Shown: positions 25,679 to 44,518, counted from the stretch's first letter. The stretch: 64,000 nucleotides of DNA from Paragordius varius (GCA_964247055.1 OZ176054.1:8990001-9054000), one strand, 5' to 3'. Notes: generated by a model not told the origin, from the letters alone. Program-made: numbers and translations.

Positions 25679-28519
25679 TTATTCTAAATATATTTCTTGG
25701 GTAGAAGCAGCGCCTTGATGTTTGATTTCGCTACCTGTATGCATTAATAAAATAAAATTATAGATGAGAATAAATAAAAAAACAGTGATAATATAAAACT
25801 TTTTTCGCCCCCCAAAAGGTTTAAAAATTAAAATATAAGATAATATATTACCCGGTATATCAGGAGCAGGTTCTGAGCTGGCAACATTTCGCAATCCCAT
25901 TAAGGGGGGAGGTGGAGGTGGCATTAAATCATCTACGCCTGTGGATTGGACAACCTTTAAGTAAGAAAAAGGAAAATATTTATTTAATATTTTATAACAT
26001 TTTTATCATATTTATTGTTGTAATCATGAGAGAAGGTTAGTTAATTAGCTTAAATAGTATTAGCGATGTATATAATAGATGTGTTTTCTTAAACATGAAA
26101 ATATCAAAACTTTGATTTCGGAAAACGGAAAATTAAAAAATTGATATGGATTATTTACAACCAATTGCTAGAAAAAATTCAACTTTGAAAAATATAATAC
26201 TTCTTCTTTGTCCTTTCCCGCAGTTTCAATCATGTTTGATTCGGTCGATTTACTGATGGCATGACTGACAGGTTTAGAGTAAAGTGCAATTTCACTTGGT
26301 GTCAATTTAAAGGCAAATTGTAGGTAAAACTAAAAAAGGCGCACACATAATATTGATATATAATTTAGTTTTATTTTTTTACACATAGTAGTGTTTTCAA
26401 ATAAAAATAAAATATTTGCTAGTTTTTCATTTTAATTATTGCCAAATAGCATAAAAATATTATTGGCTTAAAGTTGGTGCATTTAAATAAAATGTTCTCT
26501 TGCTTCAATAATTTATCTCTTTACTCCAATGTTCACTTTTTTCTTAAAAAGCAATAGATTAGAAATAATCGAATCGAATTACTATAAAAAGAATCCAAAA
26601 AAGAGTATGAAACAAACCTGTTTAGCCTGAGCATTCCAAAGATACCAAAACTTTTTGTCGATGTAATTGACGAAACTTGTACCACCCATACCATGGCCCC
26701 CAAAATTACCTCGTTCATCCAATATCCCTCCACCAAAGGTATTGAGATTGGTTGATATCCCTGGTGGTTTATCGACTTCTCGGCTTGGAACCTAAAAAAG
26801 GGTTATTAATTCAAAAATTAAAACCATTCATTTTTGTGGAGTTGTCAAAAAGATTGCAAACATGTTTTTAAAACCAAAACCGCGGCGGTTTCCATGTAGA
26901 TTATGATAGTTATAGCAGAAGGTCAATTTACAAATCCATGTTTTCCATGAGATAGATTACGATAAAATTTAAAGCAGAACGTTAATTTACAAGTAGAAAA
27001 ATACAAAAAACTGATCTATGGTTTTACAAAATTATATGGGCTAAATGAAATTTTATTTTTAATAACTTATTTTCATTTAAATAATGTTATCTATTTTAAA
27101 TGTTTTCTATTTGATTGGATATATTTAATATATTTTTAAAAAAGTTTCTGTAAAATGACAAAAATTAAAATCACAACCATTGTAATCCAGTTGTAATCTT
27201 TGATAAAACTAATTTCAATTTTATAATAATATATATGATAATTTTGACAATTTAATTATAATTCAAATATAAATCAAAGATAAAACTCTCAAATTATTAT
27301 TTTAATAATATACCTTAAAAGCAATTGTTTCATACGGTTCGGCTGCAAACAAGAGATATTGCCATTTTTTATCAGGGGGTTCTATTCTTTGCTCATAAGC
27401 TGACATAAAACGATGTCTGGGAGCAATACCATCTGCTATCTCAGGATAATCGATTTGAAACAATAAACTACATTGATTCGTTTCGGGATCTTTTTGTTTC
27501 GTTACCTGAATATAAATACATTTATTTCCTGTACTATATATGAAATAAAAAATTATTTAAGACGAAAATCTATAAAAAATAGTCATAAAAAATTCCTATA
27601 TATAATTAATACATGACGTCGAAAAATGGGGACTTATTTTAAAAATATGAAATTACCTAATATAAATATTTTTACCAAACACTTAAGGAAAATATATGAT
27701 AAGGGACAACATATAAATAAAATACCTCATTACTTTGTTGCGCTAAATATTCCAAAGCTTGAGTGTCAAACTATTACAACTGTTTTATTATCAAAAAAAC
27801 ATTACTATCATAAATTAAAAAAGATTTTTTTACAGTATATTACGGTTTAGGACAAGGATTTATTACTAATAATGATTAATATTTTTTAATTTGGCCCCCA
27901 TTACAAGAGATATTTTGAATTGCCATGTAAGGATGTGTTGATGAAAAAAAAAATAAATACCTTGTACCCGGGTCTCCCAATCTTAACAAATTTCTTCTTA
28001 GCATTATTTGCTGCGGCCATACCCATCAAAGGCATTTTTTGATCGGCTAAAACCATCGTAGGTTGAATTTGTTGTTGCGCTAAATTGTCTTTGGCTTCTT
28101 TGGCGGCCCGCCTGGCCAAATTGTGTTGATGTTTTTTACCTTGGGTGTGGGCCAAATAACTTCCTTCATTGTTATGAAGAGTGAGACAAAGCTTACATTC
28201 ATACGTACCAAGATGGTTTTTTAAGAAATATGGATCCTGCAAAAAGGGTAGTTGGGTAATTTTAAGCAAAAATATGTGTAAAAGTTTTAAAAAATATTTT
28301 GCGCAATTAATTAATTAAAGGATTAGGTACTAATTTATTATAACTGAGAAAAACAATATAAAATATTAAAAAATATTTTTTAAAATAACCTACCTTCGTT
28401 ATATCAATAGTTTCCAAAGCTAACTGTCTTAACCGTTCTCTCCTATCTTTATTGGTTTCAGACCATGAGGCCACACCACCTCCACCAGTTTTTGCTCCAG
28501 GTCGATGCTGAAAATCCAT
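25679..28519 (-). CDS. SF3A2: Splicing factor 3a subunit 2 (SF3a66/Prp11)
   Basis: MDFQHRPGAKTGGGG...DRRERLRQLALETIDI, DPYFLKNHLGTYECKLCLTLHNNEGSYLAHTQGKKHQ (U1C-type zinc finger), KFVKIGRPGYK, LLFQIDYPEI, PRHRFMSAYEQRIEPPD, QYLLFAAEPYETIAFKVPSRE. Seven GT-AG exons starting 28519-28394, 28236-27961, 27505-27314. Confidence 0.97.
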
Positions 28520-28526
28520 TATGTGA
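28520..28526. promoter_or_regulatory. 7-bp spacer between the divergent SF3A2 and EIF2B2 start codons
   Basis: ...tcCAT tatgtga ATGtat...: SF3A2 ATG at 28519 (-) and EIF2B2 ATG at 28527 (+). Confidence 0.7.
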
Positions 28527-31391
28527 ATGTATGATAAAAAAGCATTGTTAAATTTTGATTTTCAAAATCCCAAAACAAGTCTTGAAAAGGCAAATCTAAC
28601 GCTAGCATGGATAATTAAAGTGATAACCAAATCAAAAAATTTTGATGTGGAGTATCTCACAGATTTGTTGAAAAAGCAAAAAATAAATTCAATTAGTTTG
28701 GATTGTTGGGATGACCCTATTTGTGGCAATATACTATTTCGGATAAGAAAAATATTAAACGAGGAAGCCAATAGTATACAATAATTTTATTCAAGTTAAA
28801 AATGACGATGATACATTGCAAGGATTATTGCTAAATACGATGCAAACTTTGTCTATGGAATCGGAAGAAATTTTTAAAGAGAAAGTATTTGAAGCTCTTA
28901 ATGAAATGCAAATTGAATTAGAAAATTGGTACTTATGTATTTCCATGTAATTTAGTTTGGAAAATATAGCTATTCAAGCCTTGGAGCACATTCATGCAGA
29001 CGAAACCATTATGACTCTGGGACATTCTGAAACGGTCGAAACTTTTTTAAAGCAGGCTGCCAAAACCAGAAAATTCCATGTTATAATAGCAGAAGCTTAC
29101 CCTTCACTTTCGGGTCATTTGTTGGCCAAAAATTTAACAGATAATAAAGACGGTATTTTATTTTAATATTCTATTTATATTGTATTTTTGATAATATTAT
29201 TTTGTTTTTCTTTTACTTTTTTTCTTTTTTATTTTAAAATTATCATGACCCCAATCTGAGAGAAACACATGATATTAGTCATGACCTTTTTATAAAAAAA
29301 TATAATATTTAATATAATGACGAGGACTTTAACACTTGGATGCAAGACATTTATTTCAGGGCTTCGATTCGAATTGGGGAAATTGGATACCCCAGATCTG
29401 TTTAAAATTAAATAATTCAAAAAATATGGGAGGAATTATAACCATGGCAAAAGTTTGCACTATAACATTAATGAACAGAAATATAAAAAAAATTCATTTA
29501 AAAATACTCGGGTGCTTAGATATCACAATTCGAATTGAGTGTTAAAATAACATTTACTTATATATCGTTTCAAGATAATAACTAGGACCTTATTAAATAT
29601 TGGAAAAATACACAAATGTTATAATTAAATTCTAGACATATAGCACATTTAGAGGGCAAAGGAAGACCAGTATATAAACGCGTTTTTTAAAAATGAAAAT
29701 CATTTGATTTTAATTGTATTTAATTTATGTAAAATCTTTGCTAATTATATTTTCCTTTGTTTTTCTAATGATTTCTGATTTTTAGCTAGTCAAAATAAAC
29801 CTGCTATTTTCTATGACTGAATCTTAATATCCCCATTATGCGAATTTTAAAACAAAAAATATTAAATGAAGAACATTTTTAACTTTTGTTATATGGTTCC
29901 TCCCTCGATTTCCACAAAAGTTATAACTTTTACAAATTTTTTAAATATACTTATGTTACGTATAATTTTGAAGGAACAAACCCAATATCATCGTCTCTTA
30001 CAGTGAGTCTAATACCAGATTCAGCCATTTTCGCAATCATGTCACGCGTTAATAAAGTCATTCTCGGTTGTGATCTTATGCTAGCTAACGGGGGCGTCGT
30101 AGCAAAATCCGGTTCATTTAACATTGCGGCGTCCGCTAAACATTATTCTGTTCCTGTTTTCGTTTGTGCAGGTTAATTAACAAAATTTTGTTAATTATTA
30201 ATTCAAGAATAGTTTGTTATAATAAAACTCTGTGACTATATCAATAAATTTAAAAAATAAAAATTATTAATTTACATTTAAATTGTGTTTTTTATAAACA
30301 ATAGTAATCATTGACATAGATTTTACTAAGTATCCAAAATGTGCAAGGTTATAATGTTCGAGAAATGTTCTATATTATATCAATTATATTTTTATTATAA
30401 AGATCAGTTTTAACTCGTAAATATATTTTTATTAATTCACGAAGTTTTAAGATGGCGATTTCCATATTCTTAAAAACTAAACATACTTTTTTATGTAAAT
30501 AGTTGAATACCGCTATATGTTTAAATTGATATTTATAAAATGCATACCAGTAAAAATGATCTAAAATATCTGGAAAATCCATTTTGACAAAAAAAACAGT
30601 CTTTTATAATTTGGTTGCATTTATTATTTAAAGTTTTTTGAATGAATTAGACAGCAATTTAAGAATAAAAAGTTTTGAAATAAATATTTTTAAATTTGAT
30701 AACTGCAAAAATATACTTTTCCCTACATTATATTAACATTTTTCAATTGATATCATGTTATATTAATCTTGTTTAGGAATTTATAAATTAACTCCAACAT
30801 ACATGGCGCCGCCCAATGTAAATGTAAGTCCAGCCCAGTATGAAATCCCTTATTACGGAGATTTTGAACCCCTTAGCGATGATGGCACACTCTCTTATTT
30901 GACACAATCCAATGACACTGTACCACCCGAACTTATAACCGTTTACATATCTAATACGTAGACATACCCTTTTTCATTAATATTTTTTTTTCTTTCCAAT
31001 TTACATGTACAGTTGTTGTTTAACCATTAATTTATTTGTTCTTTTGGATTTACTTTTTTTATAATTATTTTAGTCAATAATTTTCTATAGATGTTTTCTA
31101 ATGATTTAAATCGAATAAACACTTCAAATTATGCAATCAAACAAAAAATCCAAATTTATTATAACCGCTTATTAAACATTAATACTAATAACATTTCAAA
31201 AACTTTTAAAATTTAAACTGTTGAGTTAATATGAAAAAAGGTATAATATTTATATAATTTGTAATTATTTATATTTGATTATTACAATTTATTATGTATA
31301 TATAATATCATCAATATACAGTGGAAGTTATGCTCCCTCCTATGTTTATCAAATGATGCGTGAATTATATAACAAAGAAGATTTGATATGA
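28527..31391 (+). CDS. EIF2B2: Translation initiation factor eIF2B subunit beta
   Basis: Exons 28527-28773, 28796-28928, 28956-29152, then exons starting 29974, 30777 and 31322. They give [64 protein letters not shown] and [13 protein letters not shown]. Confidence 0.96.
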
Positions 31392-31668
31392 TGAATTATA
31401 TTAATAAATTGCAAAATCACATTTTTTGAATCCACCTATAAACATTATTAATAAAATTGACCCCCCATTTATATAGATATATATGATAATAGAAGTGTTG
31501 TAAGAAAATTGGGTATATAATATAAATTTTTTTTACAATGACCAAAATATATTTAATTATAGTACAATAAATGGTGTGATGTTAAAAACATATACATGTA
31601 ATAAATGGACAAATCGCAAATGCACAAAAAATTAAAATATAAATTTTGAATGTGAACCAAAAATAGAT

Positions 31669-32671
31669 TTATTGGGTTGGATAAGTTGAAGTGCCATAAC
31701 CATAATTCGTCAAATTAAACATCATGCTTGGATCATATGCTTGTTGCATTCCTCCATACGTATTTGCTTGTGTTGGGTTTTGAAACGCTGTGGTCAAAAC
31801 AAAATTTTGATAACATAATGACTTAAATTTTTAAATTTTTTTTTGGCTAATGTTCCCCAAACTTAAATACAACCTTATATAAAAAGAAAAAGTGCACACA
31901 AGCCAATAAGTTTAAAGGCGATTTTTATTTTAAGCTCATACGAGAATAGGGTCAATTATAAGGAGGGGGCCATCCCACACATATATACATTGTGTGCTAT
32001 TTTATGGCAATTTGACATGGAAAAAATAATTGATAAAATTTACCTTATATTGGTTACAAAAGTGTATTTACCTCCTGCAGTTTGCTGATACGATCCTACT
32101 CCCATCATCATATCCGTGTTTGTTGGTTGCGATTGATAACTATTGTAAGGGTTATGTTGAGGATATCGAACCACATTAGCATTATAAGTGAATGATGATT
32201 GCCCGTTTGTCGATGCTTTGTTCACACTTGCTACATTATTTTGAGGCAGACCAGTGGATCTAGAAACATATTTATGTGTAAGCATTAAAATGTATTTTTA
32301 ACCATTGACAAAATAATTATACGGCTAACATAACCACAAATGTAAAATACTTGTTACTATTTTAATGGATTTTATAGAGTATTGATTAGACTTCAAAATT
32401 AATGTTTACCAGAAATCGTTTTAAAATCCAAAACTGGTGCGCTGTTACTTGAGTAAAGGTCATCCAGCCAACACTATGGGAAGGTAACAGTAGGACTTTC
32501 AGTTTAAATAGTTTGCGTTTACAAATAAACCATTATTCTTTTGTGCATATATTATGTTTTTTACTAAGTGTAGAATAAGGTAAACTAAATTAGTTGTTTA
32601 TTCCATTAAAATATATTTTTAGATTTGTAGTATTACAGACTGCTTATGACCTGGTATACATAACCTGTCCG

Positions 32672-32704
<33 letters not shown>

Positions 32705-35700
32705 TATACAGACAAATTTTTTTGATTCAATGGATAAATATATATATACATAATTATGTTAATTACACTGCGGCGTTTGTTCCATAAGGTGAATAATATT
32801 GGTTTGCTGTGGTACCGACATTAAAACCCGATGGATACATGGCTGAATACATGTTTTGGAGAGCAGTCATTTGGGCCGCATTATTCAAATTACTTTGGGG
32901 TTGTTGCACATTTTTATAACCTTCCTTGACGAAATTCATCACTGGTCTAAAATTTGTATAAATCCATAATTATATAGTTATAACCATATATAGTGTACCA
33001 CCACCCCCTATGATTCTGATAGTGGGAAAAAACATGGGTCATTATCCGCAACATGCCCTTTTATATATATAATTTTTTTCTAAAATTAAATATGCATGTG
33101 GGAAGGTGTTGTCAACTTTGAAAGATATAAATTTAAAAAAATCAAAAAAAAGGTTTGATGATCAACATGAGCTTATTTAGGCACTGTTTATAAAAAAGAG
33201 CATCATAAGGGGGCAGGGATCCACTGTAATATATTGATTTGAAAAGTTAAAATTTGATATAAAACTTTTTAGAACTATCACTTGTTGCTACAGGTGTCGA
33301 CAACTTTTGCGCATCAGTATGTGAAATCAAATTATTGAAATAACGTGTATTATTAGTACGACTCTTCTCCATATACTTTGCCGTTCTTTGTTCTAACATA
33401 GTTATATGGTATTAAACAAACATTTTCTTATATAAATAATATCCAAAATTACTACTGTTTATATGATAATAACAACAACGCCTAAGCGGATCCACAATAT
33501 ATAATTATCTTTAATTTTTATATCATTCGCATATAATCAAAATAAATAATTGAAATTATTATTTTATCAATTATATTTCTTTTATTTTACCCATTTGAAA
33601 TATACGACCATGTATTGTAATTGTGGTTTAAAAATTTTACAGAGATCATTATTACATAAAATATTCATACTATATTTTTCTGCCACGTGGGAGTCAGCCT
33701 TCTGTTTCAGGTTTTGAACATAACGATCTCTTTTAGCCTTTTTGCGAACTTTCAAAACTTTTTCTCTTAAAACCTGATCCAATTCATCTGTCCGAACGCC
33801 TTTAATCATGTCCGCAGTCAAGTTTTTGGCATCAGTGCTGGAAATTAATTGGACAAGCTTATCATGCGCAATTTTGTCAATGGGTGCTTCGTTGCTATCA
33901 CCATTTTGATCTTGGACTAATACACAACAATCAATTAAAACATTTTGGATGGGTAAATTTAAAAATTGTGTATAACATCAATTTCTATCAATGACATTTT
34001 TTTCAGTCGAAAATAACACATCGTCTAAAGCAGGAGAGCCCTGACTTCGCAGGCAGCATTTTCAACCCGCAAAACCAGCGGACCCCAATAATTACAAATA
34101 TAAATTCATAAACATTAATAAATATATTAAAAAATAAGCTAATTATATTTACGAATACTATATAACCATTATTTTTCACCAATTACACATTGCTACTTGC
34201 CAACAAACACCCTTTTAGCTTAATAAACTAAATCAATTCCAAAAAGATGTGGTGTATAAATATTAATGGCATAAGAAATATATTCTACGCATTTATCGAA
34301 AAATTGGGTATTTATAAAATTTAGATTTTAGTTAATCTTTTTTAATTTTTTGGCGAGCGCACAAGTGTCGAACTCCTCCGCTCTAAAGCATATAAATTAT
34401 TGCTGAATGAGAAAATGATATTTCTGGATAATGAAAAAAAAATGTTATAAGTCAAAATCTGTAAAAATTTACCAGCGCCTTGCGCCGTATAATCAATGTG
34501 ATCATATTCATTGTTAGAGATTGGAGGTGCACTTTTACGGAGCTGTTTTCGTGAATTTCCTTTTGCTCCAGCTTTTCCCTTCCCACCTCCAGATGTGCGT
34601 CCTCGTTTTGGATTGTTATTGTAAGAAAAATCAGTCTCGTCTTCATACGAAACATCATGCTGCCCCGGATCCTTGGGAAAAACGCCAAATCTATTACCTT
34701 AAATATTCGGATAGAAATATGTATTTTTAAGGGAATAAAGTTGTTAAACTCGTGCAAAGTTTTTAGGGTTCGTTTCTTCTAAATTTGATCTACCAAATTT
34801 AAATCTTTTAAAGATAAATTTTTTAAATCGATACAATGTGAAGAAAATACTTGTTGTGTAACTAATTTTATTTTGAAAAATATTTTTTAATTGCAGAACC
34901 AATTAAAAAATAAGGTTAAAAACTAAATTTTTTTATTTTCAGATGCTTACTTTTATATAATAAACAATATATGTAGCAAAAAAATCACATACCACCATAC
35001 GGTGGACCAAAACCAGCTGGATCCGCGTCTCCATCATAGTATGGATCAGATCTCCCACCTCCACGCATAAATAATGGGGTAGGATAGGCGGGAGGAGGAT
35101 GGGGTGGACGTCTACCCCTCATTCCCATCATGGGCATCGGGGGTGGCATGCGAGGTGGGGGCGGTCTCGGCCCCAAAAACCTGGCATGAGGTGGTGGAGG
35201 TCCAAAAAAACCAGCATGTCTTGGTCCAGGTCTAGGCCCAAAACCAGGCCTGCCAAATGGTGGAGGATGAGGAGGTCTCCGCATACCAAATCTATTTGTG
35301 GTTAAAATATGATAGTAAATTTTGAGGGGTTAGTTTGACTTATTGGTTACTAGTAAGCATTCATAACAGTAACCGTTTCTAATGATAATCAGTCAAGAAA
35401 AATATTGTCAAATATATCATTTTCTAGCGATTGTAAAAATTGTGAAATGATAAATTCTAAAATTTTGATTGGAAATAATTCTTCAAACAATCAACTTTAA
35501 TATATAACTTATAAACGCTTTAATAAGCGATCGATCGATCGGACCGCGATTATATTATATTTTTGGACCGGTACCAAAACCGTCTCAAACTCTATTGCGC
35601 GTATTCACTACAAACAAATGCAAACCTATGGGTATCAAAGGGCCCCTCCATATTTCGTCGAGCAAATTGATGAGACAAAGCGTTGGGATCTTCCCACGTA

Positions 35701-38700
35701 TACGTGTCAGCATCATACATGTCATATAAATCATAATCGGCATTGTCTCCAGTAGTTGTCGTTGTGCTATTCAACAATGATGAAAGATCGGTAGGCAGAA
35801 AGGTACATTCCTTGCCCCGGAATTGGGCATTATGGTATTCGTGCTCAGCTAAATTCTTGACATGGCCCAATTTTTGGTATGGGATACAAAAACTATCCCC
35901 TGAATCCAAAGAACCTATACTCATTACATCATCATCAACAACAGCATCCTGACCATTATTCAAATCAATAGCGGAATCTCCATTTTCTATGTTAAATGTA
36001 TATGAATATATATGAGTGTATGTGCGCAAAAGAAATGTCTCATTATTTTTTTAATTTTAAAATAGTACAACATTTTTAATGCATGATATTTAGCAATGCG
36101 GATTTTTTATCTAAAAAAATTGGTATAAAAAATAGTTTTTGATGATATTAATATATATATATACCTTTTACTGCAAGTAACGAAGTAAGTCCCAACCGAC
36201 CAGCATCCATTTCAGATAGGGCATAAATCATGTCGACAATTAAACCAGATTTAATGATTCTAGGTTCAAGCATAGTTTCTTTTTTATCACCCAACAGGGA
36301 GGCTAATTCACTTAATTTGTGAATGAGACTACTATCATGACAAACAATGTTTATCATTTTATCAAAGGCTCCACGCAACAAAATTAATTTGGCAAGCAGC
36401 ACGGATTCCATGCTAAGTCGTATCCTAAAAATACAAGTTATCTCATTAAAAATATGTAATATAGAGGGGGGTTGAGTTTGGTCCAAGACTGGTTATATTA
36501 TATATATATATATATATATATAATATGGTCTTGACTGTTAACGTTAATAAAAAACCGGTCATATTTTAAAATATGTGTTTATCATGTAAATTGATAAAAA
36601 ACAATGATTGAAACTTAGTTTTCATAGTAAAAAATGTGAAATCTAAAATTTTATTAAATTTTGATTCATTGTTATAATTATATTTGACGGCCTTATCATT
36701 TGGTTTAGTTATATATATAAATATATATATATATGACTGCATTAATAAGCGCGGTCAGATCGCTTAATAATAAAATGGGGTTATAGCCTAACTCTAATTA
36801 GTAAACAAAACAAAGATGATTGATTTTGTTTTCAAAAAATATTAAAAAATAACCATTACCAATCATTTATCGTGACAATGGATTGATTTGGGTCCAAATA
36901 AAATTGATATGTGCCAAAGAGCAAAAATTGCAATGGAACTGACGTAGATAAATCAGTAATAATACGATTTTTTGAGAGTACCTATAATATAATTATTTTT
37001 GTTTTATCACTCCTCTATTTTGTTAATATTTATATAATAGTTTTCATAAAATTAAGAGTAGGTCTTATTTTGGTAAAATTTTTGTTTTAAATACATTTTT
37101 ATCATGAAAATTAATTGTCTTAAAACAGGAAAAATGAAATTATCCCGATTAACTCAGAAAAAATATTGTTTTAAGGCAAATTGTGTTCAAGGGTAAATTT
37201 AAAGTGTAAATGGTATTGTAAATAAATACTTTTTCAGTAAACAGAAAGAAAGGTTGATTTTTTTCATCGGTCAATGATACGATTGAATTTTTGTTCATGA
37301 CGGCTAAAACATGTTTTCCAAGTAAAGCATATCTTTTACCCAAAGAGTAAACAATGTTGAAGTTGTATCCGAAATTCAAAAGCGCCATTATCTAAAAAAA
37401 CACAAATAATTTTGTAAATAAAAAATGTATTCGTCTTCGAAACAAAAATAAATTAAAAAATTGATTTGATAATCCAATCATAATTAACAATATCCAGCGT
37501 TAGTTTTCATAATCAAAATAATATATAATGATATTAATGTAAATAATCGATTATAGTGTATCATAAAATGTTTATTTAAAATTCTTTTTATTTACAAATT
37601 TGTTTTCAAAAGAGTTTAGAGTATAACATACAGTATCCAAATGAGAATCCTTGCCAAATGGATTCAAAGTATTTGGTTCAAGAGCCGAATAGCTAATGTT
37701 CAGCAGAACGTGCAAAGCTTGTTTCAAATATGTCTGTGAACGTTTAACGTTTTCACAGAAATTGGGGATCAAAAAATTTTCATCCATATATGTCATCTTG
37801 TTAGATGCGCTATATTAGTTAGTAAAATTATATAATTTAATTACAAAAGACTATACAACTTTTTTAATAAAAAATGTACAATAACTAAAATATAAAAAAC
37901 TCAGTTTCAAGATATCCTTTGTAAGCCATTAATCTGGCAATCACATCACTTTGCCGTAGGCCAGAAAAACTTTTAAGTATAGCCTGGAGTCTTTTGGTAG
38001 ATGTTTGCATAAATATATCTGGGTTAGCTTGTAAAGCTACAATGGCTGTAATGGAATCTGCTACTCTATATATAACATTTATAATATACATGAAAATTTC
38101 CACATATAGTAGAGGCTGTTAAATTCAATAAGAAAAATATATTAATACCCTAAAATGCAGGATGCAATAATCATCTTGCCAATCTTTGGATCAAAAGGAA
38201 AATTCACCAGTATTTTACCCAACGATGTTAGCTTAACCTTTTCAAACAATTGTTCACATGTCAACGTTTCTTTGGTAAAACCAATGGGTTGGGGAATTTC
38301 TAAGGCTCCTAACTGAAGTAAATTGCAAACACATTGTTTTAAACAATAAGTATCGGGTCTCAGCAGTTTAGCGTAAAATTGTAAAACGGTTTCATTTAAT
38401 AATTCAGACAAGGCTTGTGCTGCCAAAAATATTTGAGTCAGGTTGGAGGGGAAAAGAGAATAACTTGGTAACCTGTGACATGTTACATAAATATATGTTA
38501 AGGTAAATTTTTGACCGGTTAAATATATGTGTTAGAACTATATGAAACATAACAATATTTCTATTAAATTGGTGGAACAAAAGCGTTTATAATTAATAAA
38601 AAGAACAAAAAATTGATATATTATTATTTCCTGTTTGAATTTTGATATAAAAGTTTGTTTGACTGCTAATTATTTCAAAAGGGGTCACAGTCACGGTCTT

Positions 38701-38748
38701 CATAAGTCTTTAGCCCCAACGCTATTTTATTATATTTAAAATTTTTAC

Positions 38749-38784
<36 letters not shown>

Positions 38785-41700
38785 TAAGCAATCCTATATT
38801 TAAACTATTGCTTTTTTAGATATAAAGAAAAAAGACCTTTCATAACGAGCCCGACTTATAAGGTGAAAACAAAATCCTGGTCTGTAGTGAGAAGCAAGGG
38901 AATATCTCATCTCAAGTACAGATTTGGGAGCTGTAACAATCAATTTGGTAGTTGTATCAGTGCTGGCATCATACACTTGGCGTTCAACCTTACAACTATC
39001 AATCACGTAAATGATATCATTAAACGTTACACAGCATTCACCAATGTTCGTTGATAGAATTAACTAAAAAAATGTTAGTTAGAAAGGTGTATTTTATTAT
39101 CTGGTAGTTTTATAATAATTATATTCCTTAATAAAGGCCGAGATATCTCATTACGAAAGTTTATATCATAATTAAACTAAGCATTAATCAAAAAAGATGT
39201 TAAATATAAAGATTCATACCTTATAATAGCCAAGGGGGGTTTTATTGTTCATTTTTTTCCAATCATCATAGGAAGTGAATTCATGAAGTTCGTAAATTTT
39301 AAATGGGCCACCTATAAATTTTTATATAATTTGATATATATTATGAAAAAATTAAAAGGATGATTTACATAAAAACCATACAAATGCACAGATAAAAAAT
39401 TAAATGTGTCAATAATTTAAGCATCCTTCCCAAATACCTTATAAATATTAACTTAAAATTTAGCTATTAAAAAAATGTGAAAATTTTCAATTTTCCATAC
39501 TTGATATTTTAGAAATATCCATCAAATATTTATGTAAAGATTGAATATAAGCAAGATTAGGGAGTATTATAGCAATAGTTCCTGGATCTTTCAAATCCAT
39601 AATGTAATCCAACACATGCTAAAAATGTGTATAAATTTAAAAAAATACCGTTTTTTTCTTCAAAAATACAACAAAAAAAACCATAATTAAATTTTACATA
39701 TATTAATTCAAACGATATGTCCTTTTCTGGCAATTTCAAACAGGCCTGTCGAGTTTCCGCTTTATATGTTTTAGGGACACATGCATTCATATTGATCAAA
39801 CTCTCCTCATCATTCAAAAAATTCTCAGAATAATCCTCTGTTTTCGCCAATGACTCAGCTAAAATAATAATATGAGGATTATACAAAAAAAAAACAAAAA
39901 AATTCTGAAAACAATTTTTTTAATACTTGTGTAATTAAGATTTTGCATGACGCCAGGTAGTTTTTTCTTCATTTTAGTCTTCTTCCTTCTACGGATCTTA
40001 GCGTATGCAGATGAGATAGATCCATCATAATCGAATTCGGTCATTTCAACGCAATCCTCCAAAAAGTATTCTATGATATTATATTATATATATATATACA
40101 TATATATATCGTTTTTGCTTTAAATTAGTCATATATAAAAAAAAAGATATATTCCGGAAAATTCTTTACTTCCAACTTCTAATTGGGGTGTTTGGATAGT
40201 TATTATGTGCGGAGAATCGAAATACTCTTCAATATCGTCGATGGCTAAATCCGAACTGATAATAATCAACTTGAATTGGGCATATATCCTGAGAATGTCT
40301 CGCACCAGCATCAAAATAAATTCAGTCTAAAATTCCGTAAAAATTTATAATAAAAACTAAATAAGTAATATTTTTTTCTGATATTGTAGAGTTTTTTACC
40401 CATACCAAATTGAACTAAAATCGATCTTCAACTCAAAAAACGTTGATTTATATTCAAATAAAATTTTATAAAAAGATAAGTTATTTAAACAACCTGTATC
40501 ATAAACAAAAAAATACCATAGAATCCCTTTCATACACTTCATCAATTATGAGATGGCTAATGCCTTTAAGTCCATACCGTATGATACGTTGCAATAAATA
40601 TACTAAATAATCATGACAAAATTATTAATATTATATAATAGAGTAATTAATTTGGGTATATAGTATAGTATAGTTAGGTGATAAATGATGTTAAATTTAA
40701 CCCGTAAAAAAACAACAATTTTTGCAACGTTTGTGTCTCTGTAATACATATTTTTTGGCAAATTTTTAGTAGATACCATCCATTCACACGCTCAATGGTA
40801 TGTATGTATGTATGCACACAAACTCGCCAAAATATGTACTACTTTAAGAGACACATAATCATCATATTATACTATATATACCAGTGTTGCAATACAAAAC
40901 ACTTCCAAACGGTCTTGGAAGTTTCTGTTGCTGTGATTGTTGTTGTAAAACATCATTATCATGACCCATATAATGGTGCCAAGCGGCGGAGCCCTGATAA
41001 CCGGCCGTAGATTCGCGCCTTTTTGCATAATCGTCTTCCAATGTTGAAGGGGGGAGGAGCGAAATATTTTCCAACCGTTCTTCACACATTCGATGACATG
41101 CAATGCGGAGAGCCAAATCTTGTGTTGCTGCGAGGGCGGTGGATTGAACACAACCACCACTGCAAACACACACACAACATTCGGCTCCACGATTGGCCGC
41201 AATGGCTTCGTCAATAATGTATTGTGGAATCTACGGGCGACAACAGAAGGAAGGCACACATGCCAAAATGTGGTATTAACACATGCAATTAAAAGTAAAT
41301 TAAATTATTTATCGAGTTACTTTTGTTTGTTTTGGTTAACAAAATGCGTTTATTGATAAAAAAAATGCATGTATTCATTGTTAAGCTTAAATTGCAAGTA
41401 AATGTGATTATATTATTTATTGATTAGAATAGATTTTTTGGATGGTGATTTAAAGCAGGGGTGTTCAACACACATGGCATCATGAGCCCGCATTTTCAAC
41501 CCAAAAAAACCGGTGGGCCGCATTGAAAAAACTACAAAATTAAGCGAATATCATAAGATTGTAAATAAATAGTACATGAGGCGGAACTTTTAATTATAAG
41601 GTTATTAAAAAGAGTTGATTACATCGCCAATTAATTTATATAGATATTGCTGATTTTAGCAGATTAATGTAGACCTTATACATATAAACCTATTCATGAA

Positions 41701-44518
41701 AGCGATAATAGAAGAGCTTAAATAGGTGGGTTATTAATAATATAATGTACGTACAAATACATTAGTTAACATATAGGAAACAATAAGCAAATATCGTCAC
41801 AATAATTTATAATCATAATTAAATATAAAATTAACTAATTTAAATAGGTATTGTATTTAAGGGGACTAAAAGAGATCATAGTAAAAGGCAATCAGATTGC
41901 ACAAAACGAGATCTTTTGATAAAGGTATTTTTTTAATCATCGAGGACAAGATAGCAAATATTTTGAAATTAGAAATGTATTACTGATTATAAACCAAGAT
42001 ATATGTGTGTAAAGTTAACATAAAATTTTTTAAAAAAATATCGAACCGCATATATTTTTTAATTTTAAGACAAAAATTTCTTACGGGCTGCATAAATTTT
42101 TTGGAGGGGCTCATGCGGTTCGCGTGTTGGCCACCCCTGGTTTAAAGCTTAAACAGTTATATATGCACTTAATTCATTGATAATGCATATATTGACTAAA
42201 ACAACCTACATGAACATTTCTAATTATATAGGAGTTAAAAATGTTTGTAAAATTTACATTTATAGAATTAACAACAAATATTTAAATTGGGGATAAACAA
42301 ACCTGTGTAGTTTTTCCTATGCCAGGTAAGCCCTTAATGATAACAACGGAATGTTTTCGTATGGCTTCCAATATCACAGGTTCATAGTTAAATATGGGTA
42401 AATTTTTTCTTTCATCCAGAATCTAATGTTTGTCAAATTAAAAAAACACAAACCTTAGTAAGGATTGAAAAGTTTTCAACTTTATTCGTCCATTCTTTCT
42501 TCAATTGTTCATTCAAAACTTTGAAATCCTAAAAGAAAAGATTAATAATAAGAAAATGATAATCTCACAATAGGATTCGAAATTTCCGTACATGCCCATG
42601 TATCCCAATCATTAACAGGTCCATTCCATAATTCTTTAACATTAAAAAAATGTATAATACGTGGTGAGGGCTTCACAAAAGTTGCATCTGGATACACGAT
42701 ATTGATTTCGGACAAAAGGTCATTGTAACTTTTAACATTGAGAATAGCTTTTTCTGGTACCTGTAAAAAGTCAAAAAGGAATATATTTACACATACCATA
42801 GGTGCTAAATTTGAGGTTTTAAAATTAAACTCAATAAATTAAACCCAACAGCTGTTTTCTAAATTTTTTGTTTAAAAATCAAATATATGCACACTATATA
42901 ACCATATATATATATATTAAATATGTTTACAATGTTGATGGGGATTAGTTGCAAAGTCTCTAACGCTTGATCGAATTCAGCATCAACTTCGGGGTGTAAG
43001 TTAACCATATATGGTTCCATCTAACGATACATGCATAATATTGTAAGTTATCGTAAAAATTAAAACTAAAATACAGTACAATAAATTATTAAGAAACTAG
43101 GATTAATATATTTAAATAAAGAATAATATATTTCAAACAGTTATATTCAAATATAACCTATCGTTTGTCATACAAAAAGAAGATTTTCTATATAAACTGA
43201 TAACACCCTGAAACAAATTTCCCAATCATGTAGGTTAAATAGTAAAAAACTTACGTTAGAAAAAGTTATAAGTTTTTTTTTTCATTTTAATTTTTGTTAG
43301 ATAAAAGATTCAATTAAGCGAATTAAATAGAATGTATACATTCCAATCGACTCCATTTTCTTTATTAGCAGATGATGATTTATCATAGGGTTCAATGAGA
43401 TCCATGTGAAACAATTGTCGCAAAAGCATAAGGGCACATGCTTTGGAAGCCGCAATTTTGGTTGGGCCATGTTCGGATGCTGTTATCGTAGTATTTTTAT
43501 CTTTGAGATATATGCTCATGTCTGCTATGTAGCTTCTAAGAATGAAAAAACAAGAATAAAATACTACTGAATTAAATTGCAAACAATAAATATTAAAGTT
43601 TGGAACCAAAACTGTTCTTAATTTAAGTTTCAAGTAATTTTTGCTAGAAAACGGTTATATCGTTCGTTGTTTTGTGCAAAGTTTGGTGGTTCATTGTGGT
43701 GAAATGGTTAATGTATATTGCATCAAAACATTATAAATATAAAATTGTTTTTGGAGTTGCGTAAAAAGATTAAGATTACCATCTTATAAGCTAAGATATA
43801 TATAAAAATAATTTTTAAAGTTAAAAAAAGAACGAAAAAATGACAATATGCCGTTTGTTTTTTGTCAACAAATAAAATGTGTACTTGTTTTGAAGACTCG
43901 TACCCACAACTTTATATTCATATTGAGTGGAAATACGATTCGATTGTAAAAAATGATGTAATCTAGTTTTGGCATTTTCTAACTTCCAATCCCCATGAAG
44001 TACAGCGGTATCATCGATATGATCAAACTATATTTAATATATTTTTGATAAATAAAAATTTTATTATATATATTATAAAATACAAAAGAAAAATATCTTT
44101 TCCAAAAAAAATATATTTTATTAACAAAATGTTTAAACATACCTCCTCCAATTTTTGTCTGCGTTTAACTTCATCCGTTTTTTCGACACAATCAGAAAAA
44201 TATGACTGGGCAGATTCTAAAATAGGGAAAATTATTAAACCTTTAGGCATATTATCAACATCATAATCCTGCGGTATGTAACCTTCATTGACTAAATAAT
44301 CGACAAAATTTTTAGCGGCACAACCTTGTGCTTCTTTCTTATTTGAAGCTACCCCTTGAGCTACATAATCAATCGTTGTAATAAAAGCCTATATTAAAAT
44401 AAAAAAATACCTGACAAATAAACTGTGGAGTCTTGGTTCCAACACTTTTATACTCATAACTTAAATTTTTTCCATTTTTTGAACACCATGTATACAGGTA
44501 ATTCTTTACATCAGCCAT
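31669..44518 (-). CDS. DHX9: DHX9/RNA helicase A/maleless-like protein with degenerate helicase motifs and a long low-complexity C-terminus; 30 exons, ~1,806 aa
   Basis: dsRBD1 MADVKNYLYTWC...ASNKKEAQGCAAKNFVDYL; dsRBD2 LHGDWKLENAKTRLHHF...ACALMLLRQLFH; MTAD-like WNGPVNDWDTW; then RecA1/2, HA2 (LTSLGKILVNFPFDPKIGKMII) and OB fold. All 30 hand-built exons are GT-AG and phase-consistent. The last six exons (34697-31669) are less certain than the core. Confidence 0.9.
32991..33226. mobile_element. Tc1/mariner-type MITE (236 bp) in a DHX9-like intron
   Basis: Degenerate TIRs (T/C)AGTG...CCCCC(T)TATGAT flanked by TA on both sides; a related copy starts at 63930. Confidence 0.65.
33964..34090 (-). 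ncRNA. Candidate intronic box H/ACA snoRNA
   Basis: GC-rich island in an AT-rich intron. The minus strand folds into a 13-bp upper stem with G-U pairs, has an H box AGACGA 14 nt after that stem, a weaker second hairpin and ACA near 33967-33971. Confidence 0.4.
41456..42139. mobile_element. hAT (Buster/Charlie-like) MITE, 684 bp, in a DHX9-like intron
   Basis: TIRs CAGGGGTGTTCAACAC / CAGGGGTGGCCAACAC; 8-bp TSD ATTTAAAG / GTTTAAAG (one mismatch). Confidence 0.88.

What the first reader, a model, noticed from the sequence alone, without database searches (positions are those of the whole stretch)
38837..42422. DHX9/maleless-like protein looks like an intact pseudo-helicase
The frame and all splice sites are intact, and structural residues are conserved (EYFLEDC, VIDSC, RPGFCFHLISRARYER). 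The catalytic motifs are systematically changed. Motif I GATGCGKTT reads GLPGIGKTT (42303-42332). Motif Ia TQPRRISA reads CSGGCVQSTA. Motif II DEIH reads DEVY (40532-40543). Motif III SAT reads SSD (~40249-40257). Motif IV FLPG reads ILPN, LHS reads LHE, and motif V TNIAETSIT reads TNIGECCVT. Motif VI QRKGRAGR reads MRYSLASH (38887-38910). Established: in DEAH/RHA helicases the motif VI Gln/Arg residues, the DExH His and SAT couple ATP hydrolysis to unwinding, and motifs Ia/IV/V bind the RNA backbone. Inference: the protein keeps GKT and DE, so it may still bind nucleotide but not hydrolyse ATP or unwind, acting instead as a dsRNA-binding scaffold through its two dsRBDs. Drosophila Bgcn is a precedent for a catalytically dead DExH protein; I do not know of one in the DHX9 orthogroup.
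Basis: partly seen in the sequence, partly recalled or inferred. Interest (0 to 1): 0.92.

Follow-up and report, generated by a model that had tools for sequence, protein, structure and literature searches.

The report
Hairworm DHX9 gene with dead motor
A horsehair-worm relative's copy of the normally untouchable RNA helicase DHX9 is an intact, selected gene that keeps the residues that hold ATP. It has lost those that burn ATP, so it probably works as a non-enzymatic RNA-binding scaffold.

Summary
A minus-strand gene runs from 44518 to 31669. I modelled 25 exons, down to 34473. All are GT-AG, with no stop codon and introns of 22-1072 nt. It encodes a DHX9/MLE-type protein reading GLPGIGKTT, DEVY, SSD, ILPN, LHE, TNIGECCVT and MRYSLASH at the stated coordinates.

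Its closest relative is the Gordionus (Nematomorpha) "RNA helicase A-like" gene. The two share EIF2B2 as a tail-to-tail neighbour and most intron positions, so this is a positional DHX9 orthologue. Gordionus is an intermediate: DEIH is intact, but it has SGS and QRMDSAGR.

The whole protein is fast-evolving (48% of 394 metazoan-invariant columns kept). The motif loss still exceeds that: 19/46 motif positions kept, against 42/46 in an equally diverged Dictyostelium homologue. All 9 ground-state ADP/Mg contacts are kept and 0 of 6 hydrolysis/coupling residues.

The intact frame, in-frame indels, the exon/intron GC contrast and dN 0.64 against saturated dS argue against a pseudogene.

Not shown:
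- Expression. The single read-laying run failed.
- Biochemical activity.
- Whether a canonical DHX9 exists elsewhere. The scan notes a second "dismantled" DHX9-family gene on another piece of this genome, unchecked.

Verdict: a probable pseudo-helicase, a new variant of a known kind.

The parts
31669..44518 (-). Whole DHX9/MLE-like gene: ATG at 44518, TAA at 31671-31669. Exons 1-25 are modelled to 34473; the distal tail exons are only partly resolved.
   Evidence: Spliced model, all GT-AG, no stops. Collinear with Gordionus P0007.
44143..44518 (-). Exons 1-2, split by a 22-nt intron at 44410-44389. They encode dsRBD1 with K5 and region-3 NKK kept.
   Evidence: profile positions 1-77, 62 bits. 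Pfam dsrm match below threshold, E 0.0024.
43340..44027 (-). Exons 3-4: dsRBD2. Region-3 NKK reads TKI, and region-2 GPxH reads GTSLQ.
   Evidence: Contact residues taken from PMC6451107.
42303..42422 (-). Exon 8, ending in motif I / Walker A GLPGIGKTTQ (42332-42303). It still fits GxxGxGKT.
   Evidence: P-loop-type Pfam match nSTAND3, E 5e-5.
40882..41230 (-). Exon 9: motif Ia/Ib region. It is 126 nt (42 codons) longer than the Gordionus exon, in three in-frame blocks. TQPRRISA and GYSVRFES are lost; R456-equivalent is kept in HRMCEERLE.
   Evidence: No PDB match and no database homologue.
41147..41179 (-). Translated TG-rich microsatellite giving CCVCVCSGGCV inside exon 9.
   Evidence: Sequence read.
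40532..40543 (-). Motif II, DEVY in place of DEIH (exon 10, 40602-40517).
40249..40257 (-). Motif III, SSD in place of SAT (exon 11, 40326-40170).
39556..39567 (-). Motif IV, ILPN in place of FLPG (exon 14, 39618-39501).
39280..39288 (-). LHE in place of LHS (exon 15, 39311-39220).
39025..39051 (-). Motif V, TNIGECCVT in place of TNIAETSIT (exon 16, 39063-38837).
38887..38910 (-). Motif VI, MRYSLASH in place of QRKGRAGR. Q760, R764 and R767 equivalents are lost.
36165..38472 (-). Exons 17-22: winged-helix/ratchet (HA2) and OB-fold regions, strongly diverged.
   Evidence: profile positions 468-1121 aligned. HA2_N E 0.0066.
31669..35986 (-). C-terminal low-complexity tail (acidic, Pro/Arg/Gly-rich, basic KR block, Q/N/Y-rich end). 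Blocks are shared with Gordionus.
   Evidence: This tail is the subject of scan note s1-326745.

Best explanation
This is the positional orthologue of DHX9/MLE/RHA-1 in a nematomorph (horsehair worm) related to Gordionus. It is still a selected protein-coding gene, but it no longer works as an ATP-driven helicase.

Shown:
- The RecA2-side residues that stabilise the transition state and couple hydrolysis to movement are all replaced. These are the motif VI Gln and both Arg fingers, the DExH His, and SAT.
- The RNA-backbone motifs Ia/Ib/IV/V are replaced too.
- The RecA1-side residues that hold nucleotide and Mg2+ are all retained: P-loop G414/K417/T418/T419, D511/E512, R456 and L388, plus T721.
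- Erosion began before the split from Gordionus, which has SGS, QRMDSAGR and TEPRR. It then ran about twice as fast in this lineage, mainly in RecA1, RecA2 and dsRBD2.

Inferred:
- The protein binds ATP or ADP as a structural ligand without turning it over.
- It acts as a static RNA-binding/RNP scaffold. RNA would be held through dsRBD1, a weakened dsRBD2, and the long Pro/Arg/Gly- and Q/N/Y-rich tail, rather than by unwinding RNA.
For: Identity and orthology:
- Exon 16 hits DHX9 best in PDB, E 4e-18.
- A canonical-DHX9 profile aligns dsRBD1, dsRBD2 and the core through the OB fold, 673 bits.
- In the tree it joins Gordionus with 100/100 support among the animal DHX9/MLE/RHA-1 sequences; deeper nodes are unresolved.
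- EIF2B2 lies tail-to-tail downstream in both genomes.
- Exon sizes and phases match: 90, 120, 157, 227, 162, 122 nt.

Loss of catalysis beyond general divergence:
- Motif positions kept: ours 19/46, Dictyostelium 42/46 at equal overall divergence, nematodes 39-41/46 (p=5e-7).
- 0 of 6 hydrolysis/coupling residues are kept, against 9 of 9 ADP/Mg contacts (p about 2e-4 to 9e-4; contacts from PMC10619421).

Selection:
- The 25 modelled exons (about 1,530 codons) carry no stop, and all 24 introns are GT-AG.
- In simulation, 2% neutral substitution leaves the 1,240-codon core stop-free with P=0.0035.
- All ten exon-length differences from Gordionus are multiples of 3.
- Exon GC is 0.27-0.57 and intron GC 0.09-0.29.
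- dN is 0.64 against saturated dS of about 3.
- 122 derived residues are shared with Gordionus.

Extra relaxation in the core:
- Tajima test gives 191 against 96 lineage-specific changes, p=2e-8. The asymmetry lies in RecA1, RecA2 and dsRBD2, with smaller asymmetries in the linker and WH/ratchet, and none in dsRBD1 or OB.
Against: - There is no RNA evidence.
- There is no biochemical evidence.
- dS is saturated, so omega for this branch alone is not measured.
- Erosion is protein-wide: 48% of invariant columns are kept. Part of the motif loss could ride on general relaxation.
- dsRBD2 has lost canonical RNA contacts, and F699 (adenine stacking from RecA2) is lost.
- I could not search the rest of the genome for a canonical DHX9.
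- The binding-versus-catalytic residue classes were assembled after seeing the sequence.
Confidence: 0.6

Rival explanations
1. It is one of two or more DHX9-family copies. A canonical, active DHX9 elsewhere in the genome does the helicase work. This copy is a sub- or neo-functionalised duplicate, still a pseudo-helicase but not evidence that the lineage lives without DHX9 activity.
For: Scan note s1-257468 reports a second DHX9/Maleless-family gene on another piece of this genome. I could not search the genome. DHX9 is broadly required in other animals (established knowledge).
Against: - This copy, not another, sits in the conserved DHX9L-EIF2B2 arrangement shared with Gordionus.
- The other copy is itself described as 'dismantled' (unchecked).
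- None of the 119 canonical hits to the Gordionus protein carries nematomorph-derived states (at most 9 of 61). None is labelled Gordionus among those that carry a source name; about a dozen are unnamed Logan sequences. This is a weak test.
Confidence: 0.3
2. It is a decaying, unexpressed pseudogene that happens still to be open.
For: - It has a very long branch: 2.87 substitutions per site against a median of 0.29.
- 52% of invariant columns are changed in all domains.
- Microsatellite-derived inserts lie in exon 9.
- No RNA support is available.
Against: - The open frame spans 25 exons with intact splice sites. P is about 0.0035 after only 2% neutral change.
- Every indel is in frame.
- Exons are much more GC-rich than introns.
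- dN is far below saturated dS.
- Lineage-specific tail blocks are conserved with Gordionus.
- The nucleotide-contact residues are kept 9 of 9.
Confidence: 0.06
3. It is still an active ATPase/helicase that uses non-canonical motifs.
For: Walker A GxxGxGKT, Walker B D-E, R456 and the first Arg of motif VI are retained.
Against: - Both arginine fingers, the motif VI Gln, the DExH His and SAT are gone.
- Motifs Ia/Ib are unalignable and interrupted by 42 extra residues.
- From established mutagenesis of DEAH/RHA helicases, loss of these motif VI arginines alone abolishes ATPase.
- In MLE the R764 equivalent contacts the gamma-phosphate mimic (PMC10619421).
Confidence: 0.04

Closest known systems
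DHX9 / RNA helicase A (vertebrates), Maleless (Drosophila), RHA-1 (nematodes)
   Same: The architecture matches: dsRBD1, dsRBD2, linker with an NWNPW-type motif (here DWDTW), RecA1, RecA2, winged-helix/ratchet, OB fold and a Gly/Arg-containing tail. DHX9 is the best PDB match, the full-length profile aligns, and the sequence groups with animal DHX9/MLE/RHA-1 in the tree.
   Different: Motifs Ia, Ib, III, IV, V and VI and the H of DExH are replaced. RecA1 carries 42 extra residues. Only 35% identity to human DHX9 and 48% of invariant columns kept. The tail is about 570 aa and unlike the RGG tail. Nematode RHA-1 keeps all motifs.
Gordionus sp. m RMFG-2023 'ATP-dependent RNA helicase A-like' (XP_065312799/800; P0152/P0007)
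   Same: It is the positional orthologue: EIF2B2 is the neighbour and exon structure is shared. It also shares tail blocks, 122 derived residues, the TKI change in dsRBD2, and loss of SAT and of G763/R764 in motif VI.
   Different: Gordionus keeps GPTGCGKTT, DEIH, TNIAETSAT, Q760 and R767, and part of motif Ia (TEPRR). It lacks the exon-9 inserts. Its branch is a third as long (0.95 against 2.87). The gene spans 26.6 kb in 28 exons.
Bgcn (Drosophila), the catalytically dead relative of the DExH helicase YTHDC2
   Same: It is a DExH/RHA-type protein that kept the fold but lost the ATPase motifs, and it acts as an RNA-binding partner rather than an enzyme (papers listed, e.g. PMC5703642).
   Different: It belongs to a different orthogroup (YTHDC2, not DHX9) and has no dsRBDs. 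Bgcn is a Drosophila-lineage derivative with known partners (Bam). Here no partners or phenotype are known.
Utp25/Def pseudohelicase (DEAD-box-like SSU processome factor)
   Same: It is a helicase fold retained without the catalytic residues, with a structural role in an RNP (PMC9539457, listed).
   Different: It is a DEAD-box-like protein, ancient and universal in eukaryotes, not a lineage-specific loss in an otherwise active orthogroup.

Membership tests
DHX9/MLE/RHA-1 orthogroup | Two N-terminal dsRBDs followed by a DExH/RHA core | tested here: met
   The canonical-DHX9 profile aligns residues 1-76 (dsRBD1) and 105-416 (dsRBD2, linker, motif I). An exon-level Pfam dsrm match exists but is below threshold.
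DHX9/MLE/RHA-1 orthogroup | HA2 (winged-helix/ratchet) and OB-fold C-terminal to RecA2 | tested here: met
   Profile positions 468-1121 align to residues 493-1193. The HA2_N Pfam match is E 0.0066, below threshold. These are the most diverged domains, with 36-44% of invariant columns kept.
DHX9/MLE/RHA-1 orthogroup | Groups with DHX9 sequences in a tree, and shares synteny with an annotated orthologue | tested here: met
   It forms a 100/100 clade with Gordionus 'RNA helicase A-like' among the animal DHX9/MLE/RHA-1 sequences. It is a long-branch taxon, and the deeper placement is unresolved. The EIF2B2 neighbour is conserved.
DHX9/MLE/RHA-1 orthogroup | Intact helicase motifs I, Ia, Ib, II (DEIH), III (SAT), IV, V, VI (QRxGRAGR) | tested here: not met
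   Only motif I's GxxGxGKT and the D-E of motif II survive; 19/46 motif positions are kept. It is therefore a member by descent, not by catalytic signature.
Pseudoenzyme (pseudo-helicase) | Homologous to an active enzyme family but lacking residues essential for catalysis | tested here: met
   Q760M, R764L, R767H, H514Y and SAT to SSD. This is significant against divergence-matched controls.
Pseudoenzyme (pseudo-helicase) | Maintained by purifying selection, not a pseudogene | tested here: met
   Open frame, in-frame indels, GC contrast, dN well below saturated dS, and conserved lineage-specific blocks. The support is indirect: omega for this branch alone was not measurable.
Pseudoenzyme (pseudo-helicase) | Expressed as RNA and protein | tested here: inconclusive
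The five listed RNA runs of the species are tiny and hold none of the words.
Pseudoenzyme (pseudo-helicase) | Lacks ATPase/unwinding activity in vitro | not testable with these tools
   This needs recombinant protein.

The most novel reading that the evidence does not exclude
Gordiid horsehair worms have no catalytically competent DHX9 at all. The single orthologue lost SAT and an arginine finger in their common ancestor. It then survived as an ATP-binding, non-hydrolysing RNA-binding scaffold that kept eroding in this lineage. That would make this an animal lineage without DHX9 helicase activity, and a natural two-step series (Gordionus, then this species) of a helicase turning into a pseudo-helicase.
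Probability: 0.3. Interest if true: 0.75.

Novelty: new variant of a known kind. Interest (0 to 1): 0.55.

Why it matters
DHX9/MLE/RHA-1 is one of the most conserved RNA helicases in animals. Its known roles are generally tied to ATP-driven unwinding: dosage compensation, control of dsRNA and R-loops, and germline silencing.

An orthologue that is kept by selection after losing the hydrolysis machinery, while keeping every nucleotide-holding residue, would show which DHX9 functions do not need unwinding. Together with the partly eroded Gordionus protein, it offers two natural stages for studying how a helicase becomes a scaffold.

It also bears on the reported loss of many universal metazoan genes in Nematomorpha. 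Some apparently missing or divergent genes may be repurposed rather than lost.

Tried and rejected
No splice or expression evidence was obtained.

2. Finding the window's own protein or sister-species orthologues.
- phmmer of exon 16 against 1.84 billion representatives gave nothing above 52% identity.
- A search with exon 9 gave no hit.
- The Gordionus query found no other nematomorph protein.

3. PDB search with exon 9 found no match.

4. A hidden canonical exon or second copy in the window. tBLASTn with human-type, Trichuris and Tachypleus DHX9 found only the modelled exons. Intron 8 has no other copy in the window.

5. The exon-9 inserts as unspliced ultra-short introns. Only one GT..AG candidate keeps the frame, a 21-nt stretch at 40951-40931, and it cannot be judged without RNA. 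The others would shift the frame away from the conserved LPRPFG.

6. Exon-versus-intron word sharing between samples.
- X3/X4 hold 0.30-0.35 of the words over the exon-bearing stretch but 0.16-0.17 of intron 8.
- The assembly's own sample, X1/X2, shows the reverse: 0.65-0.67 against 0.75-0.85.
- This is suggestive of exon conservation. My decomposition was internally inconsistent, so I do not count it as evidence.

7. YN00 dN/dS failed because of saturation.

8. The search of earlier findings by sequence returned blank, which means nothing.

9. The idea that the window is Gordionus itself was rejected. EIF2B2 exons are only 49-95% identical between the two loci. The protein is absent from the database that holds the Gordionus proteome.


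Full report
WHAT IS THERE

The window is AT-rich (GC 0.22-0.36 in 2-kb bins). On the minus strand it carries a multi-exon gene. I allowed very short introns because earlier scan notes on this genome report introns of 21-36 nt. With that, I built a model of 25 exons from ATG 44518 to 34473. Every intron is GT-AG, there is no stop, and introns run from 22 to 1,072 nt. The tail continues to a TAA at 31671-31669.

Every quoted motif is at the quoted place:
- GLPGIGKTTQ: 42332-42303
- DEVY: 40543-40532
- SSD: 40257-40249
- ILPN: 39567-39556
- LHE: 39288-39280
- TNIGECCVT: 39051-39025
- MRYSLASH: 38910-38887

Exon 16 aligns to solved DHX9 with E 4e-18, to MLE with 2.5e-14, and to DHX36 only at 2e-8. 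The alignment places LEMRYSLASHY over LEQRKGRAGRV.

The one imprecise point is motif Ia. Against the nearest relative, the TQPRRISA position is more likely LAATQDLA, after an 11-residue insert. A profile of 119 canonical DHX9 proteins cannot align residues 417-492 at all.

WHOSE GENE IT IS

An exhaustive phmmer search with exon 16 found no protein above 52% identity. One hit, P0007, shares the N-terminus, the core and the unusual tail. It is 'ATP-dependent RNA helicase A-like' of Gordionus sp. m RMFG-2023, a horsehair worm.

Its locus (L001) resembles the window in three ways:
- GC content is similar, 0.263 against 0.273.
- An IF-2B (EIF2B2) gene lies tail-to-tail immediately downstream, just as in the window. 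EIF2B2 exon matches are 49-95% identical, so these are two species.
- I mapped the Gordionus protein exactly onto 28 exons. From the helicase core on, exon sizes match or differ by multiples of three (90, 120, 157, 227, 162, 122 nt are identical). Several N-terminal Gordionus exons correspond to single exons here.

A maximum-likelihood tree joins the two with 100/100 support among the animal DHX9/MLE/RHA-1 sequences. Deeper nodes are unresolved, and both are long-branch, compositionally odd rows. The stem is 1.44, Gordionus 0.95 and this gene 2.87 substitutions per site, against a median terminal branch of 0.29.

The gene is therefore the positional DHX9 orthologue of a nematomorph. The species itself is not identified. 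Four nematomorph genomes are published (10.1101/2024.06.11.598342), and Gordionus has a genome GC of 26.9% (10.1101/2023.06.26.546503).

IS THE MOTIF LOSS MORE THAN FAST EVOLUTION?

The whole protein is eroded. Among 394 columns that are at least 97% invariant in 119 canonical DHX9/MLE proteins:
- This gene keeps 48%.
- Gordionus keeps 66%.
- Canonical members lose on average 2 columns.
- Every domain is affected, from 61% kept in the dsRBDs to 36% in the OB fold.

Divergence-matched controls nevertheless show a specific loss. I scored 46 motif positions (I, Ia, II, III, IV, V, VI):

| Sequence | Invariant columns kept | Motif positions kept |
|---|---|---|
| This gene | 48% | 19/46 |
| Dictyostelium homologue | 49% | 42/46 |
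| Four nematode RHA-1 proteins | 69-78% | 39-41/46 |
| Gordionus | 66% | 33/46 |

The contrast between this gene and Dictyostelium gives Fisher p=5e-7.

Gordionus reads GPTGCGKTTQ, TEPRRMNC, DEIH, SGS, IFPG, TNIAETSAT and QRMDSAGR. SAT and the G-R of motif VI are therefore lost in both lineages, which suggests, though the replacing residues differ, that the loss predates their split. The remaining changes are specific to this lineage.

A relative-rate test gives 191 changes unique to this gene against 96 unique to Gordionus (p=2e-8). The asymmetry sits mainly in RecA1 (40 v 17), RecA2 (40 v 15) and dsRBD2 (14 v 4), with smaller asymmetries in the linker (21 v 10) and WH/ratchet (38 v 19). There is none in dsRBD1 (10 v 8) or the OB fold (26 v 22).

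Among the long sequences carrying an NWN-type DHX9 linker motif that I retrieved, only Gordionus lacks motif VI.

WHAT THE POCKET STILL HAS

The DHX9-ADP-Mg structures name the ground-state contacts: L388, G414, K417, T418, T419, R456, D511, E512 and T721, plus F699 from RecA2. They also note that R764 (MLE R768) touches the gamma-phosphate mimic (PMC10619421).

In this gene:
- All nine RecA1/ribose/Mg contacts are kept. F699 is N.
- H514, A544, T545, Q760, R764 and R767 are all replaced.
- With a background retention of 48%, nine of nine has P about 0.001. The contrast with 0 of 6 gives Fisher p between 2e-4 and 9e-4.
- The P-loop GLPGIGKTT still fits GxxGxGKT, and on its own it matches P-loop NTPase models.

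The caveat is that I assembled the two residue classes after seeing the sequence.

GENE OR PSEUDOGENE?

No RNA evidence could be obtained. The species' listed RNA runs are tiny and hold none of the gene. Runs X1/X2 hold intron 8 at 0.85 and 0.75, so they are DNA of the assembled sample.

The indirect evidence is consistent:
- The 25 modelled exons form an open frame of about 1,530 codons, and all 24 introns have canonical splice sites.
- In simulation, only 2% neutral substitution leaves the 1,240-codon core stop-free with P=0.0035, and 5% never does.
- Exon 9 is 126 nt longer than its Gordionus counterpart. All ten exon-length differences are multiples of three. Ten independent neutral indels would do that with P about 2e-5.
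- Exons are 0.27-0.57 GC against 0.09-0.29 for introns.
- dN to Gordionus is 0.64 while dS is saturated near 3.
- 122 derived residues and several tail blocks are shared with Gordionus.

Omega on this branch alone could not be measured.

RNA BINDING

dsRBD1 keeps K5 and the region-3 NKK. In dsRBD2 the NKKxxxK motif, which binds the major groove in MLE (PMC6451107), reads TKIAASK in both nematomorphs. The region-2 His is lost here only. Core motifs Ia, Ib, IV and V are gone. RNA binding through the helicase tunnel is therefore doubtful, and binding through dsRBD2 is probably weakened. dsRBD1 and the long basic, Pro/Arg/Gly-rich tail remain candidates.

WHAT REMAINS OPEN

I could not search the rest of the genome. 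An earlier scan note (s1-257468, unchecked) reports a second DHX9-family gene with a 'dismantled' core on another piece of this genome. No note reports a canonical copy, but ordinary genes are not noted.

The 119 canonical hits to the Gordionus protein carry no nematomorph-derived states. None is labelled Gordionus among those that carry a source name; about a dozen are unnamed Logan sequences. This is a weak test.

A literature search found dead DExH and DEAD-like proteins (Bgcn, Utp25) but no dead DHX9.

VERDICT

The most likely reading is a pseudo-helicase descended from the DHX9 orthologue, kept by selection. Its ATP hydrolysis and coupling machinery is lost, and its nucleotide-holding residues are retained. 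Its relative Gordionus shows an earlier stage of the same process. I class it as a new variant of a known kind (pseudoenzymes/pseudo-helicases). Its importance depends on whether any canonical DHX9 survives in these animals.

Noticed in passing
window 44389-44410, 42423-42453, 42529-42568: This gene needs ultra-short introns of 22, 31 and 40 nt to stay in frame. Reading through the 22-nt one hits a stop. The Gordionus intron orthologous to the 22-nt one is 41 nt, and its other short introns run 41-52 nt.
   Followed up: partly
window 41147-41179 and 40925-40951: Exon 9 contains a translated TG-rich microsatellite, giving CCVCVCSGGCV. It also contains a CAA/CAG run, giving QQQSQQQ. Inside the run lies a 21-nt GT..AG stretch (40951-40931) that could be an in-frame ultra-short intron.
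   Followed up: partly
window 28500-31670 and L001 36781-46586: EIF2B2 lies tail-to-tail with the DHX9-like gene in both this genome and Gordionus. This is conserved microsynteny across two nematomorph genera.
   Followed up: yes
L001 11101-25484: The Gordionus orthologue has a 14.4-kb intron inside dsRBD2, between its exons 6 and 7. These two exons (47+134 nt) correspond to the single 196-nt exon 4 here, so the window gene has no intron at that position. Gordionus also splits several N-terminal exons that are single exons here.
   Followed up: no
window 41231-42302: The 1,072-nt intron 8 contains GC-richer segments that look like imperfect terminal inverted repeats (around 42105-42140 and 41455-41490). 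This may be a small transposon remnant. There is no second copy in the window.
   Followed up: partly
window 38100-43000 (runs X3, X4, X5, X11, X12): DNA runs from a second sample and from three differently labelled organisms share 13-36% of the 31-mers of this locus. Close sister taxa or divergent populations therefore exist and could give a proper dN/dS.
   Followed up: no
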